Source: Setoptus koraiensis (Eukaryota > Animalia > Arthropoda). Taken from it: DNA of 64,000 bases. Within the stretch, counting starts at the first letter, position 1; the number at the start of each line of letters is the position of its first letter. The position numbers were made by a program, and so were the translations under genes. The stretch lies in contig CM106586.1 of the NCBI GenBank assembly GCA_048013815.1, positions 24,242,001-24,306,000 on the forward strand, given 5' to 3'. Shown here piece after piece: positions 15,520-24,079 of the stretch. The notes under the pieces were generated by a model that saw only the letters and a list, made by a program, of their open reading frames with translations, was not told where the DNA came from and searched no databases.

Positions 15520-16945
<1,426 letters not shown>

Positions 16946-17151
16946 ATAGATAAAGAATCAACTGGAATATTAGATCATTTTTATTTATGTCGGGCTTACA
17001 ATATCCATAATATATACAAAAATAACCCTGAGTTCTAATTTAACACCAATGTAAAGAACATGAATGAAGATGCACACAAGCAAACAAATTTTTTCATTTG
17101 ATATTGAGATTGTTTTACTTTTGTGGTACATTCATCAAGGTTGACCTTGCT

Positions 17152-17514
17152 CTATCCGCCGTGGAGTGTCGATATAAATAAGACATTATCATTTGGTTGT
17201 AATTGATATTCGTGACCTCCTAATATTTCATAATCTACATCATTAACAAGTATCAAAATGCCTGGTCTAATATTGTCTCCTGACACAAACAATTCAGGCC
17301 TTTCTTTAATGTGATGGTCCAGTAAATGTTGAATCAGGCCCTTTATTGTACAATTATTTGCTGCTAGGTCTAAATTCAGTGTCTTGAGATTATTGAATAA
17401 TAATTCGGTACCGCCACCAAACTCCACTCTGACTTTAAGACCTTCCCTTTTGCAACAATCCTCGAGAGCTGGCGCGTGACCATCGACATGCTTCTGACTA
17501 ATACCACTGGCCAT
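17152..17514 (-). CDS. URM1: Ubiquitin-related modifier 1 (Urm1) with a ~24-aa foreign N-terminal extension; intronless, 120 aa
   Basis: Contains VEFGGGTELLF, RPELFV, IRPGILILVNDVDYE and the C-terminal LFISTLHGG, all Urm1 hallmarks. The N-terminal MASGISQKHVDGHAPALE is not Urm1-like and matches the neighbouring gene at 18552. Confidence 0.95.
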   Translation of the reverse strand: MASGISQKHVDGHAPALEDCCKREGLKVRVEFGGGTELLFNNLKTLNLDLAANNCTIKGLIQHLLDHHIKERPELFVSGDNIRPGILILVNDVDYEILGGHEYQLQPNDNVLFISTLHGG

Positions 17515-17702
17515 CGTTTTTATTACAGTCTATTATTTTTGTTTAGTATTTAGTTAGATAGCTGGTTCTCATTAGGTTAGTTGCTTGTTGAATTATCTTG
17601 GGGTTGGCATGTGGTTGTGTTGATAAATGATTTGGTTCCCCCTAGTGCGTAGAACTGAGCGCCAAATTTGATTGTAAAAACTCTCGGAGAATTTAGTGAT
17701 CG
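17461..17702 (-). repeat. Diverged inverted duplicate of 18348-18605 (core promoter, 5'UTR and first 18 codons of the C11orf54-like gene)
   Basis: The reverse complement of 17461-17633 aligns along its length with 18428-18605 (aaatcatttatcaacacaacca...caaga[t/c]aattcaacaag[c/a]aactaaccta...atggccag). The coding part matches at 44/54 nt. An exact 12-mer, cgatcactaaat, recurs at 17691-17702(-) and 18348-18359(+). Confidence 0.92.
17653..17658 (-). promoter_or_regulatory. Candidate arthropod Initiator (TCAGTT) for URM1
   Basis: TCAGT-type Inr at the position equivalent to TCAGTC at 18405-18410 in the parental copy (25 vs 23 nt upstream of the shared aaatcattt block). Confidence 0.45.
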
Positions 17703-17758
17703 GGGGAGGTATGTCTCCCCCTCGCACCTCCCTGTCCATAAGTGGGAGCTGGGCATGA

Positions 17759-17974
17759 ATTGAGATCTGGAGGTGGAGAGCCATCTTCAATTGATGCCAA
17801 CCCATGGTTTTCAACACCAGAATCATCAGAGGGTGAGCTTGTAGAAAATTTTGATGACAACGAAGAAGAAGGTGAGGTATTTTTGTGTTTTACATCATCG
17901 TGCGTTGCTATAGCTGTCTCGATCAAATCTACAAACAATTTAGCTCGCACATCTTTTTGCAACTTCCGCTCCTC
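17759..17974 (-). repeat. 216-bp near-identical inverted copy of 21101-21316 (internal fragment of the 1226-aa ORF)
   Basis: By eye, 215/216 nt are identical (gaggagcg[g/a]aagttgcaaaaagatg...ccagatctcaat). The peptide QKDVRAKLF...PPPDLN appears in both ORFs 17693-17962(-) and 20399-24079(+). Confidence 0.95.
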
Positions 17975-18231
17975 TCCGGAGACACCATGTTATGTGCGCT
18001 AAAAAATACGAGCCATTAAGATTAAATAATTTTTCTAATTACATCATCACCTGTCGTGAGCATTGTTCAAAACACGCGCCACATGTTGTTACCTAACAAG
18101 TTTGTACAGACAACATAAAAAATTATTTACAACTGTTTAAATATCAAATAAAATACATACTTTATCTACAGTATATTGCTAAATACAGTCCAACTGGCGA
18201 GACATTTGGTGATGTCGCCATGATAAATTTA

Positions 18232-18295
18232 TTACAATGCGACATGCTGGCACGATATTACGATGCGACATGCTGACACGATGTTACGATGCGAC
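18232..18295. repeat. 26-bp tandem repeat, ~2.5 copies, in the divergent URM1/C11orf54 promoter
   Basis: ttacaatgcgacatgctggcacgata / ttacgatgcgacatgctgacacgatg / ttacgatgcgac. Confidence 0.85.
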
Positions 18296-18404
18296 GCCTT
18301 AACGTCACGCCACAGTACAATAATCTGCGTCTAGAATTTTCATCAACGATCACTAAATAGATATATTACTCGTCGTAATTTACTGTTGCGAAGCAATAAA
18401 ACAA

Positions 18405-18410
18405 TCAGTC
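18405..18410 (+). promoter_or_regulatory. Candidate Initiator (TCAGTC) for the C11orf54-like gene
   Basis: TCAGT motif ~145 nt upstream of the ATG at 18552, at the start of the block duplicated to URM1. Confidence 0.45.
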
Positions 18411-18551
18411 TAGTTTTCATCTCGATCAAATCATTTATCAACACAACCATATGCGAACCTCAAGACAATTCAACAAGAAACTAACCTACTGTAATAAGAA
18501 CCAACTATCTTACTGAATACTGATCAATAATAAAAGATTGTAATAAGAACA

Positions 18552-19514
18552 ATGGCCAGCGGTTTGAGTCAAAAGTATTTCGATAGTCACACGCCAGCTT
18601 TCGAAGAGCTTGTCGAGGTATTAGGTAGCGGCCTGAAAAAATACTTCGCCGAAGTTCAAGTGAGCTTAGTAGACAGTCCAGACTTTACGCAAAAGCCATT
18701 TTGTAGTGCAATCAAAGGTTTGAACGGCAAGCCACGCATTGCGGATGTTGGCGGCGTGCACAATCTGATACCAAGAGTCAATCTGGAATCAAAGTTCTCA
18801 TTGAACGAAGTTTGCAAAGCCACGCACTCCCAGAATGAGTTACCAGTTTCAATTTTTGGGCCAGGAGCTGGACCTTTCGATCAACTGGGCTTCAACAGCG
18901 AATTGATGGCAAGTGCCAAATGCGAAGACGGTGATCACATCAATTGTTTGTGTCGTTTCGCTTATGTCGATGAACAAGGCAACAGTCAATATAGAGAATT
19001 GGACGGGCCCAAGTTTGGTCTAATGGGCAACTTTTTCATTTCTCAAGATCTACCAGGGAAGGTTCTGAGGATTTTGGTGAAAAAACGTATTGACAAGTTG
19101 AATTATACTGACTCTATAAGAGCGGTACTATTGGAAAAATATGGTGATAAACCAGTTAGCATGGGAGGTATCTTTTTGATTAATTCTGGAACAGCCAATT
19201 TTCACGTTATGCCCAAGTGTTGGCCTGAGGAGCCATCAACCAATGAGAGTGTCAATAATCATTGGCTGAAATATTATCTATTCGATAAGAATCCGCCCAT
19301 GGTTTGTTTGTCGGTGATCCATAGTTACGATCCTGGTTATGGCCTGCGAATGGAGCATACTCATTGCTATAATCCGAAGACAGAAACAGACGCCGGCCAC
19401 TATCATTACGACACTACACCTGATACTATTGAATATGAGGGTTACTTCAATGTAGCCGAACAAGTTCATAGATTGGGTGGTCCAAATGACGCAGATGCCA
19501 AGAATACATTCTAG
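18552..19514 (+). CDS. C11orf54/PTD012-like (DUF1907) zinc-binding hydrolase family protein; intronless, 320 aa
   Basis: Motifs HTPAFEELVEVL..GLK.YFAEVQVS.VDSPD, IADVGG, GPGAGP, PVSMGGIF, MEHTHCY and GHYHYDTTP are characteristic of DUF1907 (HxH...H zinc site). Confidence 0.93.
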   Translation: MASGLSQKYFDSHTPAFEELVEVLGSGLKKYFAEVQVSLVDSPDFTQKPFCSAIKGLNGKPRIADVGGVHNLIPRVNLESKFSLNEVCKATHSQNELPVSIFGPGAGPFDQLGFNSELMASAKCEDGDHINCLCRFAYVDEQGNSQYRELDGPKFGLMGNFFISQDLPGKVLRILVKKRIDKLNYTDSIRAVLLEKYGDKPVSMGGIFLINSGTANFHVMPKCWPEEPSTNESVNNHWLKYYLFDKNPPMVCLSVIHSYDPGYGLRMEHTHCYNPKTETDAGHYHYDTTPDTIEYEGYFNVAEQVHRLGGPNDADAKNTF

Positions 19515-20398
19515 ATGTTGATTGATATTGGTCACTAAACCCTAATTGTGAGCAAAAAACACGAAAGATACCAGCAGTGCTGGCTTGCAGGCAAACATAC
19601 AAACAAATAGACCAAGAAGTTAATACATTCTGTGCCCTTACCATTTTAAAGAACATAACATGTATAATCATAAAAAGCAAAGATGAAAATGAAAAAAGTG
19701 AAAATACTCACTTTACAAACTTGGCTCGGTTGTCTATTCTTTAGCCTTCTGCTGTCTTTCTCTGCGAACTTTACTCTCGAAAGCACCTCCAATCCAATGA
19801 TAGCTCCTTACATCTTTTCCAGTCATTGACATCTCTTCTCTTGCTTGAGTCGGCTTGAGTGACAACACAGATAATTTTAAATAGTCATAGATGATGAACA
19901 CTATGGGCATAGATCATTATTAGTTTACTCAAGCAGCAAGAGTTGTTTTATATTGAAACACGACAATAGAATGGAAAAACATGTCGGGACTGATCTTATT
20001 TGTATACCATGAGCGAACTAAATGGAACTTCTTTCACACTACAATGCGAGATCATTAACTCAAACCACAATATAGCAAGATAATTGTGAAATCGACTATG
20101 ATTAATATCAGACATTTCTCGCTCTCTCTCTCTCTCTCTCTCTGACCTATTTCTACTAGCAACAAGTACTCGCAATCAATTCTTCCATTATTGTTATTAT
20201 AGTCAAGATAGTTTGATGTGCACTTGTCAAATCCAAGTTGTCGACCAAATATTAATGTGCTAATAATTAATAATAATTAACAATATGCATCGCAACATTC
20301 ATTTGATTTTCTCAAAAGTTTTAATTAAATCAAATTGTTTGTGAATGATACAATAATCATTTTTTCATCAATTTTCAGCGAATATCTATTTATGAGAG

Positions 20399-23300
20399 AT
20401 GATGATTAATTTGAGAGCAAAATTCAAAAGTTATGAAGAAGCACTCAAGTTTATGTATGGTGGTTTACCGCTTGTCTCTATCAAAATATTTATGATCTAC
20501 CTAACTCTCTTGCCGCAAACAATAAATACATCTCAGGATCTGGCCTCAGCAATTACCTCAACATTGTCTTCTCCCCAGACAGTATCTGTTGATGGTTTAG
20601 ATGGCGAGGCAAGAGAATCAATTAAAAATCTATTGTCATCATTATCTTCACCGGAAGTTTTAGCAAACTTGGAACAAAACTTAGAAGAATCTAAATTATT
20701 TCAACAACAACCACAACAAAAGTCTGACGGATTATCTTTAGAGAGCATAATTGGCAATTACCTCTCGAATAACAATGTGGATGTTAACGAACTACTCAAG
20801 AAGCATCAATACAACTTGACAAATGGTTATGATACATTACCGTCGGCCTCAATCGCAAATTTATTTACTACTAAGAACGGAACAAACTTTCTCAGTGACC
20901 TCAACAGCACATTATCATCAAACAAAATTGGAGATTTTCTATTGACGCAATTGAATGGTTCGGGGGGTAAGCCATTAGATGGTTTACTGAATAGAGAGCA
21001 AGCCATCAAAGATACACTAACCAAAGTATTGAGTAAAAGTTTGAGCGAGGTAACTGATCATATGTCATTAGACACATTGACTAAATTGAAAAAGCAACAA
21101 GAGGAGCGAAAGTTGCAAAAAGATGTGCGAGCTAAATTGTTTGTAGATTTGATCGAGACAGCTATAGCAACGCACGATGATGTAAAACACAAAAATACCT
21201 CACCTTCTTCTTCGTTGTCATCAAAATTTTCTACAAGCTCACCCTCTGATGATTCTGGTGTTGAAAACCATGGGTTGGCATCAATTGAAGATGGCTCTCC
21301 ACCTCCAGATCTCAATCCAGTTCCACTCTTGAATTATGATTCATTGAACGAACCAGAAGAAGGAAATTCATCACACGATGAAGACATCACTAGTGGCGAT
21401 GGTGATTCAATAAGTAAACAGCAACAACAATCTAACAAAGATGAAAAGGCGAACAATGAGGACGCAGTCCTGAAGCAACAGATTGAAATACAGAATGACT
21501 CACAAATTAAAAGACAATTTAAAAAGTTCAAAGATCGTTTCGCTACGAGAAAGAGACAATTGGAACAAATCAAAAAGTTATTCAATATAGAAATGATATT
21601 AAATCCTCGAAGCTCAAAATCAAATTCAACCAGTTCAGTATCGAACAATTACAAAACTGATGGTAAATATGAGGCTCACGACTTGATTATCATAGACGGA
21701 GAGACTGGCAAGACGAAAGAAGTATCAACTGGCTCACTCAAGAATAATAGCAAGCAACGAAAAATAGATAGAGAAACTAACAGAAATAGTAAGAAGGATC
21801 TCGCTGTTATCAAGTCTGTTAAGGACTCGCAAGATGATGATGCTTACAAGAGATTTCGAACGAAATTCAACGACTATGAGGATTATCAAAAATACTTAAG
21901 AGAGAATCCCGAGTTTCTCAGCGATGGGCTCTCAGAGGACTTATCGTCCAATGACGAAGAATCCACAAGAAATCTCGATGATATTTCAGATCATCAAGAT
22001 TCAGACGATTCAGACGAAAATTTCACTAATCGTGCCTCTGATAGCTATGCAATGAACAAGTATAGAGGCATGACACAATTATCTGAATTAGAGAGAGAGG
22101 ACTCAATGAACGGTGTCGTTCCTTCCAGTTTGAGAGGTTACAGACAGTTATTGGCAAAAGGTGTTAATTCAGAAAATCTAAATGACGTATTAGATCCCGA
22201 ATCACAGTCAAGGTCCGCGGACATGACCGACAAAAATCGAAGGGCCTTGCTGTGGCAGCTTTATGAAGATGATAATAATAGTATTAGGAAGCTTATTGAT
22301 GAAAGTCATCCGAGCCCAGCATTGGATTCATCTAGTGGAGATAGACATATTACGAGAGCTCAATTGGAGCAAATGATTATTCGGCAATCATTAGCAACTA
22401 ATCATGATAATTCAACCAGTTTGGATTCAGTCTTGAGACAACAATTATTGAATTCAACCAGTGGAAGTAATAGTGTTAGCAACAATAAGCGATCATCATT
22501 GCTTCTCGATGGCCACCAAAACATTGATAAATTTATAGCAACTCTCGTTGATCGTCATGATAAGGGTAAAACAACGAAAAATAAAACATTAATAGAGATA
22601 CTGTCGAACCTTTCTAACAATGAAAGGTCACTTTCTCAACCAAGCTTACTACAACCAATCAATAATCACTTTCACGACATAGATGCTGACCGATCCTATG
22701 TCAATAGGTACGGTTCAGATATCCATCCAAATACAGAACAAAACATTGTTAATAGCCATGTGGTTGGATCGAAAATTCCCAACAACACATATTTGGGCAA
22801 TCACAACATGTACAATACTCACCAAAAAGCGATAATCATGCAATCCAATCAGCCAAATCACCAACGCTATCAACTAATGCAAACTTCACCTCTGACAAGC
22901 GGCTCCCCTAATCCGCAACAACAGCATCAGTATCACAATAAATATCACCATGGAATTAATAGTGGTCCTTACAGTGCCAATAATAGGCAAGATCATGGTC
23001 AGGAATTCTCGTCGTCTTCTGTTAATCAGAATATTTCACCACCAAGCCAAACAAACAAGCCAACAGTTGTGTATGGCAGTAATAATCCGCAACAATCAGC
23101 ACCTACTTTAGATCGATTTCAAGCATGGAGCGATGTGAGCCATACTGAGGCCAGCTCATCGGATAAAAAATTGGGCGTTAGCAACATTAGCGTAGCTAGC
23201 GACACCACAATCAATTATACATCAAACTTATCACCGCCATACGCTATCAACAATAACAATAATCAGGGTAATCGATCAATATCAAATGTTGTCTTCACAT

Positions 23301-24079
23301 CAACTTATCCATTACCAACGGCAATGTCCAACACCATAAACAATAACGCTTTATTGCGTCAGAATCCAACAAACAACAACAACAATAACAACAGCAACAA
23401 TAAGAGATTGCATAATACCTATAGTGCGGGTGCGGGTGCGTTTGATGGTCAATCGGTCAACAATCATCATAACACATTACGCCTACAATCGCCTACGTCT
23501 TTGAGCAAAAATAACCACAACAACAATAACAATAATACAATTTCAAGGTCACCTCTTTCACCAACGATGAATCCATCCACAAAGAATACATCGTTTCTGT
23601 ATCCCAGTGACATTGTTACCTCATTCCCAGGTAAAAATTCTAACAACGACAAAAAGAGAGGAGCAAAATTTGCTCAAAAGCACCCTATATCAAAAAATGA
23701 TTTCCCTCATAACGGCTCCACGAATGATGAAGATTCTTATGGAACTAACAACAATGACGACACTGACAATTCGGACTATGACAACAACGACAATGATGCA
23801 ACGCAAACAGATAATAAGAAGTTTCACAAGCAAGGGGTTGGTAATGATGGATCTATGAAAAAATTCAAGTATTCAGCGTCCAAAATATCAACAAAACATG
23901 TACCGTTTTATGGTGATTCCTTAACGATAATGGGTGGCAGTAGACCTGTGAAGAGTGTGGAACGCGATTACTTTAGTAACTACAAAAAAGTGGATAGAGG
24001 TAAAGTAAGCAAACCGCACTCATTTCACAACAAATCACAAGAACAGTCGACTCAATTACCAAAAACTAAACGCCATTGA
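20399..24079 (+). CDS. Uncharacterised 1226-aa low-complexity (N/S/Q/D-rich) protein, no recognised domain
   Basis: 3.7-kb uninterrupted ORF in AT-rich DNA. The true start is uncertain (ATGs at 20399, 20402 and 20453; possible splice acceptor ttttcag just upstream). Confidence 0.8.
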   Translation: MMINLRAKFKSYEEALKFMYGGLPLVSIKIFMIYLTLLPQTINTSQDLASAITSTLSSPQTVSVDGLDGEARESIKNLLSSLSSPEVLANLEQNLEESKLFQQQPQQKSDGLSLESIIGNYLSNNNVDVNELLKKHQYNLTNGYDTLPSASIANLFTTKNGTNFLSDLNSTLSSNKIGDFLLTQLNGSGGKPLDGLLNREQAIKDTLTKVLSKSLSEVTDHMSLDTLTKLKKQQEERKLQKDVRAKLFVDLIETAIATHDDVKHKNTSPSSSLSSKFSTSSPSDDSGVENHGLASIEDGSPPPDLNPVPLLNYDSLNEPEEGNSSHDEDITSGDGDSISKQQQQSNKDEKANNEDAVLKQQIEIQNDSQIKRQFKKFKDRFATRKRQLEQIKKLFNIEMILNPRSSKSNSTSSVSNNYKTDGKYEAHDLIIIDGETGKTKEVSTGSLKNNSKQRKIDRETNRNSKKDLAVIKSVKDSQDDDAYKRFRTKFNDYEDYQKYLRENPEFLSDGLSEDLSSNDEESTRNLDDISDHQDSDDSDENFTNRASDSYAMNKYRGMTQLSELEREDSMNGVVPSSLRGYRQLLAKGVNSENLNDVLDPESQSRSADMTDKNRRALLWQLYEDDNNSIRKLIDESHPSPALDSSSGDRHITRAQLEQMIIRQSLATNHDNSTSLDSVLRQQLLNSTSGSNSVSNNKRSSLLLDGHQNIDKFIATLVDRHDKGKTTKNKTLIEILSNLSNNERSLSQPSLLQPINNHFHDIDADRSYVNRYGSDIHPNTEQNIVNSHVVGSKIPNNTYLGNHNMYNTHQKAIIMQSNQPNHQRYQLMQTSPLTSGSPNPQQQHQYHNKYHHGINSGPYSANNRQDHGQEFSSSSVNQNISPPSQTNKPTVVYGSNNPQQSAPTLDRFQAWSDVSHTEASSSDKKLGVSNISVASDTTINYTSNLSPPYAINNNNNQGNRSISNVVFTSTYPLPTAMSNTINNNALLRQNPTNNNNNNNSNNKRLHNTYSAGAGAFDGQSVNNHHNTLRLQSPTSLSKNNHNNNNNNTISRSPLSPTMNPSTKNTSFLYPSDIVTSFPGKNSNNDKKRGAKFAQKHPISKNDFPHNGSTNDEDSYGTNNNDDTDNSDYDNNDNDATQTDNKKFHKQGVGNDGSMKKFKYSASKISTKHVPFYGDSLTIMGGSRPVKSVERDYFSNYKKVDRGKVSKPHSFHNKSQEQSTQLPKTKRH

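What the first reader, a model, noticed from the sequence alone, without database searches (positions are those of the whole stretch)
17152..18605. Chimeric URM1: core promoter, 5'UTR and only start codon borrowed from the neighbouring C11orf54-like gene by inverted duplication
Seen in sequence: URM1(-) and the C11orf54-like gene(+) are head-to-head. The URM1 upstream region plus first 18 codons (17461-17633) is a diverged inverted copy of 18428-18605. The coding parts match at 44/54 nt and 12/18 aa (MASGISQKHVDGHAPALE vs MASGLSQKYFDSHTPAFE). Homology extends to a positionally conserved TCAGT initiator and an exact 12-mer (cgatcactaaat). The 120-aa Urm1 ORF has no other methionine, so it depends on the borrowed ATG. 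Established knowledge: Urm1 is a conserved, usually single-copy sulfur carrier (tRNA wobble-U thiolation and urmylation) whose ubiquitin fold starts near the N-terminus. Inference: an intronless Urm1 coding sequence (retroposed or translocated) was rescued by capturing the neighbour's transcription and translation start. Six of the nine changed codons are non-synonymous while the frame stayed open, which suggests relaxed constraint on a tolerated leader. The junction may lie further in, at a shared G-L-K (EGLKV vs SGLKK). I know of no description of such a Urm1 fusion.
Basis: partly seen in the sequence, partly recalled or inferred. Interest (0 to 1): 0.85.

Follow-up and report, generated by a model that had tools for sequence, protein, structure and literature searches.

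The report
URM1 re-headed by neighbour's flipped start
In this compact mite genome the only gene for the sulfur-carrier protein Urm1 has been turned round, has lost its own start codon, and now opens with a mirror-image copy of the leader and first 18 codons of the gene next door; a sister species still shows the "before" state, which makes this a clean example of an essential gene surviving a rearrangement.

Summary
Window 17459-17634 (-) is an inverted copy, 83-87% identical, of 18427-18607 (+). That source is most of the 5'UTR and the first 18 codons of the DUF1907/C11orf54 gene. The genome holds only these two copies.

URM1 and DUF1907 are each single-copy.

A close relative (contig L009) has URM1(+) then DUF1907(+) in tandem, with a normal 98-aa Urm1 starting MDNLRVKV. 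Its ATG aligns to AGG at window 17446-17448. So in the window's lineage:
- URM1 was inverted in place.
- It was fused in frame, 12 nt upstream of its old ATG, to the flipped DUF1907 front end.
- It then lost the old ATG.

The Urm1 core is under purifying selection (dN/dS 0.10). The 25-residue leader is predicted to be disordered.

Capture of the core promoter is unproven, because high identity starts 18 nt downstream of the donor's TCAGT.

Transcription and translation were not tested: the two RNA runs laid no reads.

The kind is known (chimeric 5' capture at a rearrangement). The scan had already noted similar re-headed genes elsewhere in this genome, and I reproduced one of them (PSMC4/eIF3i).

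The parts
17152..17514 (-). Complete URM1 ORF, 120 aa plus stop. It is the only URM1 in the genome.
17155..17445 (-). Urm1 beta-grasp core (codons 24-120), ending in the C-terminal Gly-Gly. It is 86% identical to the relative's Urm1, with dN/dS 0.10.
17446..17448 (-). Relic of the ancestral start codon: AGG (Arg23), aligned to the relative's ATG.
17449..17460 (-). Former URM1 5'UTR, now translated as codons 19-22 (D-C-C-K). The junction with the borrowed part lies at 17457-17460.
17461..17514 (-). Borrowed start codon and first 18 codons (MASGISQKHVDGHAPALE). This is a flipped copy of 18552-18605, with a strong Kozak context (A at -3, G at +4).
17515..17634 (-). Borrowed 5'UTR, a flipped copy of 18427-18551 at 86.7% identity. 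It contains two short uORFs.
17635..17691 (-). Unassigned 57 nt upstream of the copy. It holds a TCAGT initiator-like motif at 17654-17658, 142 nt from the ATG. This is the candidate URM1 transcription start, not verified.
17692..17732 (+). Fragment of a low-copy repeat ending in a conserved GGGGGAGG/CCTCCCCC hairpin, possibly a transposon end.
17756..17975 (-). Very recent inverted copy (about 99.5% identical) of coding sequence 21100-21319 of the large downstream gene, lying in the URM1 upstream region.
18023..18426 (+). DUF1907 upstream region, still collinear with the relative's URM1-DUF1907 spacer (L009 535-940). It includes the conserved TCAGT at 18405-18409 and the 12-mer at 18347-18358.
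18427..18607 (+). Donor segment: most of the DUF1907 5'UTR plus codons 1-18 (and 2 further nt).
18552..19514 (+). DUF1907 / C11orf54-like gene: intact, single-copy, 90% identical to the relative's protein.

Best explanation
URM1 here is a re-headed essential gene.

Shown:
- The ancestral arrangement, kept in a sister species, was URM1(+) then DUF1907(+) in tandem, each with its own start.
- In the window's lineage the roughly 0.5-kb URM1 unit now lies inverted, just after AP2M1.
- Its 5' end, cut 12 nt upstream of the old ATG, is joined in frame to a flipped copy of the DUF1907 5'UTR (about 120 nt) and first 18 codons.
- The old ATG has become AGG.

Inferred:
- Transcription starts in or just upstream of the copied leader, possibly at the TCAGT at 17654-17658.
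- Ribosomes start at the borrowed ATG, which has a strong context.
- The product is an Urm1 with a 25-residue disordered N-terminal tail: 18 residues from DUF1907, 4 from the former UTR, and Arg in place of the old Met.
- The free C-terminal Gly-Gly, which carries the thiocarboxylate, is untouched, so tRNA thiolation and urmylation can proceed.
- An in-frame join was the viable outcome, because an out-of-frame upstream ATG would have blocked Urm1 synthesis. Once the upstream ATG was in use, loss of the old one was neutral.

The molecular route is also inferred. The junction (DUF1907 codon 18/19 joined to URM1 position -12) has the topology of a tandem-duplication or template-jump junction that was then placed in inverted orientation. 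The most economical route is one break-repair event: fold-back or template-switch synthesis copying the DUF1907 front end and then URM1. The resulting inverted repeat was later remodelled at its centre, which now holds a repeat fragment and a recent 217-220-nt templated insert.
For: - Inverted copy: 83-87% identical, only two copies in the genome.
- URM1 and DUF1907 are each single-copy.
- The relative's contig L009 has URM1(+, 98 aa, MDNLRVKV...), DUF1907(+) and the large gene(+) in tandem.
- L009 148-453 aligns to window 17456-17151 on the minus strand at 84%. L009 535-1023 and 1017-5315 stay collinear on the plus strand.
- The relative's ATG aligns to AGG.
- The leader keeps ancestral DUF1907 states (I5, H9, L17) that the window's own DUF1907 has since changed. 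So the copy came from an ancestral DUF1907, and both copies have diverged since.
- Urm1 core: dN 0.073, dS 0.77, omega 0.10, against 0.07 for DUF1907. All 29 invariant Urm1 columns are retained, including the terminal GG.
- All 19 other Urm1 proteins aligned start no more than about 7 residues before strand 1.
- AlphaFold model: residues 1-25 are coil at pLDDT 53-61, and strand 1 starts at residue 26.
- A CTU1-like partner gene is present and intact.
- An independent contig from another study spans the junction.
- Large N-terminal tags on yeast Urm1 (TAP-Urm1) still conjugate to substrates (PMC5349211).
Against: - There is no RNA or protein evidence. The two RNA runs laid 0 reads and were no test.
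- The transcription start is unknown, and high identity begins 18 nt downstream of the donor's initiator motif. The promoter may therefore not be borrowed.
- If transcription starts at TCAGT, the copied UTR carries two uATGs.
- The left breakpoint and the fate of the old URM1 promoter could not be traced. L009 1-147 has no detectable match.
- What lay upstream of URM1 in the relative is unknown.
- The 25-codon leader is too short for its open frame to prove that it is translated.
Confidence: 0.75

Rival explanations
1. The copy acts only as promoter or 5'UTR. Urm1 would be translated from another start: an upstream exon spliced onto an acceptor near 17449 (ttgttgcaaaAG|G), or a non-AUG codon near the old start.
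For: An AG preceded by a weak pyrimidine stretch sits just upstream of the old start. There are no RNA data to exclude splicing.
Against: - The relative's gene has no intron here and starts at the aligned ATG.
- Eriophyoid genes are mostly intronless (PMC7738191).
- The borrowed ATG is in frame, has A at -3 and G at +4, and comes before any alternative start.
- AGG is among the weakest near-cognate start codons (general knowledge).
Confidence: 0.1
2. A stepwise origin rather than one repair event. First, a tandem duplication from URM1 position -12 to DUF1907 codon 18 created a chimeric second URM1 behind a full DUF1907 promoter. Later, that unit was inverted and the original URM1 was lost. This is a rival about the route only; the end state is the same.
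For: - The junction topology is exactly that of a tandem duplication.
- The positionally matching TCAGT and 12-mer could be remnants of a copied promoter.
- Chimeric genes arising from tandem duplications are well documented (PMC5460883).
Against: - It needs at least three fixed events.
- No relic of a second URM1 or of the old promoter is detectable between 17635 and 18022.
- Identity drops abruptly at 17634/18427.
Confidence: 0.3
3. URM1 is a decaying pseudogene left behind by the rearrangement.
For: It has lost its canonical ATG and its own promoter.
Against: - It is the only copy in a 48.7-Mb, two-contig assembly.
- Omega is 0.10 over a dS of 0.77.
- All invariant residues and the C-terminal GG are kept, and the fold prediction is confident.
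- The ORF is identical apart from one leader SNP in a second sample.
- The partner CTU1 is retained.
Confidence: 0.04
4. Assembly artefact: a mis-joined or collapsed inverted repeat.
For: The 617 nt between 17629 and 18245 are not covered by the contigs of run X6.
Against: - The arms differ by 13-17%, so they cannot be an assembler's duplicate.
- An X6 contig from another study spans AP2M1's 3' end, URM1, the junction and the copied UTR.
- Three further runs from three studies hold 99% of the 31-mers of 17000-19600, although one of them may be the source sample.
Confidence: 0.02
5. One reading: a retroposed or translocated intronless URM1 landed next to DUF1907 and was rescued there.
For: URM1 has no intron. 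In more distant mites it lies elsewhere, between DPAGT1 and MRPL32.
Against: - The sister species already has URM1 next to DUF1907, in tandem and with its own start. The move to this neighbourhood therefore came before the re-heading and is separate from it.
- There is no poly(A) relic and no target-site duplication.
- Being intronless is the norm in this clade (PMC7738191).
Confidence: 0.03

Closest known systems
Chimeric genes formed by partial duplication or rearrangement in Drosophila (Rogers et al. 2017, PMC5460883; Stewart & Rogers 2019, PMC6776367)
   Same: One gene's promoter-proximal region, 5'UTR and first codons are joined in frame to the body of a neighbouring gene. The donor stays intact.
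   Different: In those cases the chimera is usually an extra, young and often polymorphic gene copy. Here the only copy of a conserved housekeeping gene was re-headed, the copy is inverted, and the original start codon has since been lost.
Inverted duplications at inversion breakpoints, the staggered-break model (Ranz et al. 2007, PMC1885836; Guillen & Ruiz 2012, PMC3355041)
   Same: An inversion is accompanied by an inverted duplicate of non-repetitive flanking gene sequence, and genes at the breakpoints are altered.
   Different: - Those inversions are kilobases to megabases long; this one is about 0.5 kb.
- The duplicate sits at the wrong end for a simple staggered-break product. That model predicts the copy beyond URM1's 3' end, not fused to its 5' end.
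- A candidate roughly 20-nt duplicate at both ends (16960-16982 and 18023-18045) is only marginal (8 of 300 shuffles).
Canonical eukaryotic Urm1 (Pfam PF09138; PDB 1XO3/1WGK mouse, 2QJL/2PKO yeast)
   Same: Full-length match to the family, C-terminal GG, predicted beta-grasp fold.
   Different: It has a 25-residue N-terminal extension of foreign origin and no Met at the canonical position. All 19 homologues aligned start 1-7 residues before strand 1.
Engineered N-terminally tagged Urm1 (TAP-Urm1 in yeast, PMC5349211)
   Same: An Urm1 carrying extra N-terminal sequence still conjugates to its substrates. This makes a natural N-terminal tail plausible as a tolerated feature.
   Different: That tag is artificial and was tested in yeast. 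The natural 25-residue tail here has not been tested.
Other re-headed genes noted by this scan in the same genome (PSMC4/eIF3i, DAD1/akirin, MRPL32/DDX6, metaxin/TBC1D5)
   Same: A head-to-head neighbour's 5' end is mirrored onto a housekeeping gene. I reproduced the mirrored arms for PSMC4/eIF3i (L024 2291-2330 against 2852-2891, and 2389-2454 against 2721-2786).
   Different: Only the URM1 case has, so far, an outgroup contig that shows both the un-inverted tandem ancestor and the relic of the old ATG.

Membership tests
Urm1 (PF09138) | Sequence match above the curated Pfam cut-off over the whole domain | tested here: met
   111.9 bits against a cut-off of 21.8; residues 27-120 match profile positions 1-96 of 96. 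Mouse URM1 (1XO3) matches at E 1e-27.
Urm1 (PF09138) | C-terminal Gly-Gly as the last residues (the site of thiocarboxylation and conjugation) | tested here: met
   The ORF ends ...STLHGG followed by the stop. This is invariant in all 20 aligned sequences.
Urm1 (PF09138) | Beta-grasp fold | tested here: met
   AlphaFold2 mean pLDDT 81.9. Residues 31-110 score mostly 84-94, with the strand/helix order of a beta-grasp.
Urm1 (PF09138) | The protein starts a few residues before strand 1 | tested here: not met
   25 residues precede strand 1, against 1-7 in the 19 homologues aligned. This is a deviation in architecture, not a failure of domain membership.
Urm1 (PF09138) | Pathway partners present in the genome (CTU1/Ncs6, CTU2/Ncs2) | tested here: inconclusive
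   A CTU1-like ATP_bind_3 match scores 40.9 bits, over the cut-off, in a 322-aa open frame. CTU2 scores only 25 bits, below its cut-off of 27.9. Uba4/MOCS3 was not searched.
Urm1 (PF09138) | Acts as a sulfur carrier and protein modifier | not testable with these tools
   This needs tRNA thiolation or urmylation assays.
DUF1907 / C11orf54 (PF08925) | Full-length family match and similarity to the solved human protein | tested here: met
   305.7 bits, residues 25-307. PDB 1XCR matches at E 1.4e-70 from residue 9.
Chimeric gene by 5' capture | Two identifiable parents, an in-frame junction, and an intact donor | tested here: met
Chimeric gene by 5' capture | An outgroup with the unfused state | tested here: met
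   L009: 98-aa URM1 with its own ATG, in tandem with DUF1907.
Chimeric gene by 5' capture | The chimeric transcript or protein is expressed | tested here: inconclusive
   RNA runs X9 and X12 laid 0 reads anywhere on the stretch, so the organism was not shown to be in those runs.
Inversion by staggered breaks | The same flanking sequence is duplicated, inverted, at both ends of the inverted segment | tested here: inconclusive
   Only a marginal match of about 20 nt at 16960-16982 and 18023-18045. The large duplicate (the DUF1907 5' end) is not placed where this model predicts.

The most novel reading that the evidence does not exclude
URM1 would be one instance of a recurrent, genome-wide process in eriophyoid mites. 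Break repair by fold-back or template-switch synthesis flips a gene and at the same time hands it a mirror copy of its new neighbour's leader and start codon. In a genome with tiny intergenic spacers, this would let essential genes survive the very high rate of gene-order scrambling seen in these mites. It would also build symmetric divergent gene pairs that share 5'UTRs, and possibly their regulation. The resulting inverted repeats would then stay fragile and attract further templated insertions, as with the 220-nt insert here.
Probability: 0.35. Interest if true: 0.7.

Novelty: new member of a known kind. Interest (0 to 1): 0.5.

Why it matters
The case gives a fully polarised before-and-after picture. 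The sister species keeps the tandem genes and the old ATG. The window shows the inverted gene, the foreign front end and an AGG relic of the old start. Together they show how a single-copy, conserved gene can lose its promoter, leader and start codon and still stay under strong purifying selection.

It also shows start-codon migration through an in-frame upstream ATG, and it offers a natural test of how much N-terminal extension Urm1 tolerates.

Together with the similar cases noted elsewhere in this genome, it points to a testable mechanism that couples micro-inversions with promoter and start capture in extremely compact genomes. Published comparisons find very little conserved gene order among eriophyoid mites (bioRxiv 10.64898/2026.08.24.746826).

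Tried and rejected
- RNA evidence. My single read-laying run used two RNA runs carrying the same species label as a DNA holder. Both laid 0 reads, so they were no test. Run X1, guessed to be RNA, gave only a 243-nt contig inside DUF1907.
- Left breakpoint. The relative's URM1 upstream region (L009 1-155) and 3' flank (453-535) have no significant match in 16930-17151 or 17635-18100 in either orientation. The fate of the old promoter and the exact left breakpoint therefore remain unknown.
- AP2M1 route. I tried to reach the relative's left flank through AP2M1 orthologues. The protein is too conserved to pick out the right species, and the contigs retrieved came from other mites with no URM1 nearby.
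- 12-mer as proof of extended homology: weakened, because it overlaps a repeat-family fragment.
- Residual homology between the inner left half (17635-17755, 17976-18030) and the DUF1907 upstream region or the relative's spacer: none beyond the 12-mer.
- Symmetry centre. The centre of the arms (about 18030) coincides with the left limit of collinearity (18023). I do not rely on this, because the recent 220-nt insert changed the spacer length.
- Rfam scan of 16500-19000: nothing.
- Exact-sequence look-up of both proteins: neither is in the collection.
- Scan note on MRPL32/DDX6. I found no DNA-level inverted repeat in C2:24199700-24216000. That case may be visible only at protein level, and I did not pursue it.
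- Microhomology at the junction: at most 2 nt (GA) are ambiguous, and no convincing longer microhomology exists.
Full report
**What is there**

The ORF at 17152-17514 (-) encodes 120 aa. Residues 27-120 match the whole Pfam Urm1 domain (111.9 bits), and the protein ends in the obligatory Gly-Gly. The ORF at 18552-19514 (+) is a full-length DUF1907/C11orf54 homologue (305.7 bits; human PTD012, PDB 1XCR, E 1.4e-70). The two genes are head-to-head. AP-2 mu (AP2M1) ends at 16945, convergent with URM1.

Six-frame searches of the whole 48.7-Mb, two-contig assembly find exactly one URM1 and one DUF1907. The nearest named homologues are from acariform mites. An earlier scan note calls the genome eriophyoid, which fits its compactness and lack of introns.

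**Checking the observation**

- The reverse complement of 17459-17634 aligns to 18427-18607 at 83%.
- The 5'UTR part matches at 104/120 (86.7%) with one 5-nt indel.
- The coding part matches at 44/54 nt and 12/18 aa.
- The genome holds no third copy.
- The URM1 ORF has a single Met, and an in-frame stop lies five codons upstream of it.

Beyond the arm, a TCAGT sits 142 nt (URM1) and 145 nt (DUF1907) upstream of the two ATGs. An exact 12-mer lies 70 and 80 nt beyond the arm ends. The sequence between these marks cannot be aligned. On the URM1 side, 9-11 nt of the 12-mer belong to a 41-nt fragment (17692-17732) of a low-copy repeat with a conserved GGGGGAGG/CCTCCCCC hairpin, which has at least five other copies in the genome. 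Extension of the copy into the donor's core promoter is therefore suggested by position but is not demonstrated. High identity begins 18 nt downstream of the donor's TCAGT.

**The comparison that settles the origin**

The best Urm1 hit (P0001, 86% identity, 98 aa) lies on a 5.3-kb Logan contig (L009). That contig carries URM1(+), DUF1907(+) and the large downstream gene(+), all in tandem.

- L009 148-453 aligns to window 17456-17151 on the opposite strand at 84%.
- L009 535-1023 and 1017-5315 stay collinear with window 18023-22929 on the same strand.

So the URM1 unit alone has been inverted in the window's lineage.

The relative's Urm1 starts MDNLRVKVEFGGG. Its ATG aligns to AGG (Arg23) at 17446-17448, and homology continues through 8-12 nt of the relative's 5'UTR, up to 17456-17461. 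The junction with the DUF1907-derived part therefore lies at 17457-17460. Codons 19-22 (D-C-C-K) are translated former UTR.

The relative's DUF1907 begins MASGISQKHFNSYTPALEE and has no copy on its URM1. The F.H.P.LEEL motif is conserved in DUF1907 proteins as far as human. The direction of copying is therefore DUF1907 to URM1.

More distant mites have normal 94-101-aa Urm1 proteins flanked by DPAGT1 and MRPL32, and their DUF1907 lies elsewhere. The URM1-DUF1907 adjacency therefore arose earlier, in the common ancestor of the window species and the L009 species, and is separate from the re-heading. This, together with the fact that about 84% of eriophyoid genes have no intron (PMC7738191), removes the case for retroposition.

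**Timing and selection**

Using the relative to polarise the 54 coding nucleotides:
- 6 sites changed on the window's DUF1907 branch: I5L, H9Y, L17F and three synonymous changes.
- 3 sites changed on the URM1-leader branch: F10V, S12G and T14A, all non-synonymous.
- 6 sites separate both copies from the relative.

The copies differ by about 13% in the UTR, while synonymous divergence between the two species is 0.6-0.77. The event therefore post-dates the species split but is not recent. Gene conversion between the arms could make it look younger than it is.

The Urm1 core has dN 0.073, dS 0.77 and omega 0.10, comparable with 0.07 for DUF1907. All 29 invariant alignment columns are kept. A second sample (run X6, from a different study) carries P15T in the leader, at a proline that is invariant in DUF1907. 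The picture is a strongly constrained Urm1 body and a leader that has been freed from DUF1907's constraints.

**How it most likely works**

The borrowed ATG has A at -3 and G at +4 and is the first in-frame ATG. The AlphaFold2 model predicts residues 1-25 as coil (pLDDT 53-61), with strand 1 starting at residue 26. Urm1 chemistry happens at the C-terminus, and yeast TAP-Urm1, which carries a far larger N-terminal tag, still conjugates to Ahp1 (PMC5349211). A CTU1-like partner gene is intact in this genome.

I therefore infer that the mite makes a functional Urm1 with a 25-residue foreign tail. I also infer that the in-frame join was the viable outcome, and that the old ATG decayed neutrally once the upstream ATG was in use.

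If transcription starts at the TCAGT motifs, the two genes now have similar 5'UTRs, each with short uORFs. This could couple their translational control.

None of the above has been verified with RNA. The two RNA runs laid no reads at all.

**Mechanism of origin (inference)**

The junction joins DUF1907 codon 18/19 to URM1 position -12. This is the topology of a tandem duplication or a backward template jump, and the joined unit now lies inverted. The simple staggered-break inversion model (PMC1885836) would place the duplicate beyond URM1's 3' end, so it does not fit.

Two routes remain:
- One break-repair event with fold-back or template-switch synthesis. It would copy the DUF1907 front end and then URM1 in inverted orientation, and the original URM1 would be lost.
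- A tandem duplication that created a chimeric second URM1 (as in PMC5460883), followed by inversion and loss of the first copy.

I cannot separate the two with the data available.

The middle of the inverted repeat is a patchwork: 57 unassigned nt, the hairpin-repeat fragment, and a 217-220-nt inverted copy (one or two mismatches) of coding sequence from 3.1 kb away. This is what one would expect if the inverted repeat remained a fragile site.

**Context and novelty**

Chimeric 5' capture and gene alterations at inversion breakpoints are known (PMC5460883, PMC6776367, PMC1885836, PMC3355041). I therefore class this as a new member of a known kind. Three features are unusual:
- The recipient is the only copy of a conserved housekeeping gene.
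- The relic of the old start codon is still visible.
- A sister species preserves the ancestral state.

The scan had already noted analogous cases on other DNA of this genome: DAD1/akirin, MRPL32/DDX6, metaxin/TBC1D5 and PSMC4/eIF3i. I reproduced the mirrored 5' arms of PSMC4/eIF3i. I did not find a DNA-level repeat at the MRPL32 locus.

Eriophyoid genomes are reported to share very little gene order (bioRxiv 10.64898/2026.08.24.746826). A recurrent flip-and-re-head process would help explain how such scrambling is survivable. This is the most novel reading that my evidence does not exclude.

Noticed in passing
window 17756-17975 and 21100-21319: A 217-220-nt inverted copy, with one or two mismatches, of coding sequence from the large downstream gene (20399-24079). 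It sits in the URM1 upstream region, on the same strand as URM1. It is very recent. Contigs of run X6 leave 17629-18245 uncovered, so the insert may be polymorphic.
   Followed up: partly
window 17692-17732; also G000 C1:2437248, C2:18940953, C1:11313174, C2:5288115, C2:11164951: A low-copy repeat family starting TAGTGATCGGGGGAGG..CCTCCCCCTC. Its 7-8-bp hairpin is kept by compensatory changes between copies. In L006 two such ends face each other. It is possibly the end of a hAT-like or other DNA transposon.
   Followed up: partly
window 18230-18281: A tandem 26-nt direct repeat (TATTACRATGCGACATGCTGRCACGA, two copies plus a partial third) about 130-180 nt upstream of the DUF1907 TCAGT. It is partly conserved in the relative (L009 about 800-850) and may be a promoter element.
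   Followed up: no
window 17472: In run X6 (another study) G>T changes leader codon 15 from Pro to Thr. This proline is invariant in DUF1907 proteins.
   Followed up: yes
window 17515-17656 and 18407-18551: If transcription starts at the TCAGT motifs, both 5'UTRs carry uORFs. URM1 has MPTPR* and MRTSYLTKY*. DUF1907 has a 21-codon uORF. The relative's shorter DUF1907 UTR has no uATG.
   Followed up: partly
the L010 and L011 loci and the SRR29131048 contig: In more distant mites URM1 lies between DPAGT1 (head-to-head) and MRPL32 (tail-to-tail). In this genome MRPL32 lies tens of kb away and, according to a scan note, has itself been re-headed.
   Followed up: no
L024 (G000 C2:20877900-20884900), 2291-2891: The eIF3i(-)/PSMC4(+) spacer is a diverged palindrome: arms 2291-2330/2852-2891 and 2389-2454/2721-2786, about 80% identical. 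The mirrored region includes eIF3i's ATG. This is a second case of mirrored 5' ends in this genome.
   Followed up: partly
window 15713-16945: The AP2M1 open frame lacks the first ~25 residues of AP-2 mu, so at least one 5' intron or exon lies upstream. Its stop is only 206 nt from URM1's stop. The only AATAAA downstream of URM1 (16980-16985) is 35 nt from AP2M1's stop, so the two 3'UTRs probably overlap.
   Followed up: no
G000 C1:16775997-16776101: The only CTU2-like match in the genome scores 25 bits, below the Pfam cut-off of 27.9. CTU2 may be very divergent here.
   Followed up: no
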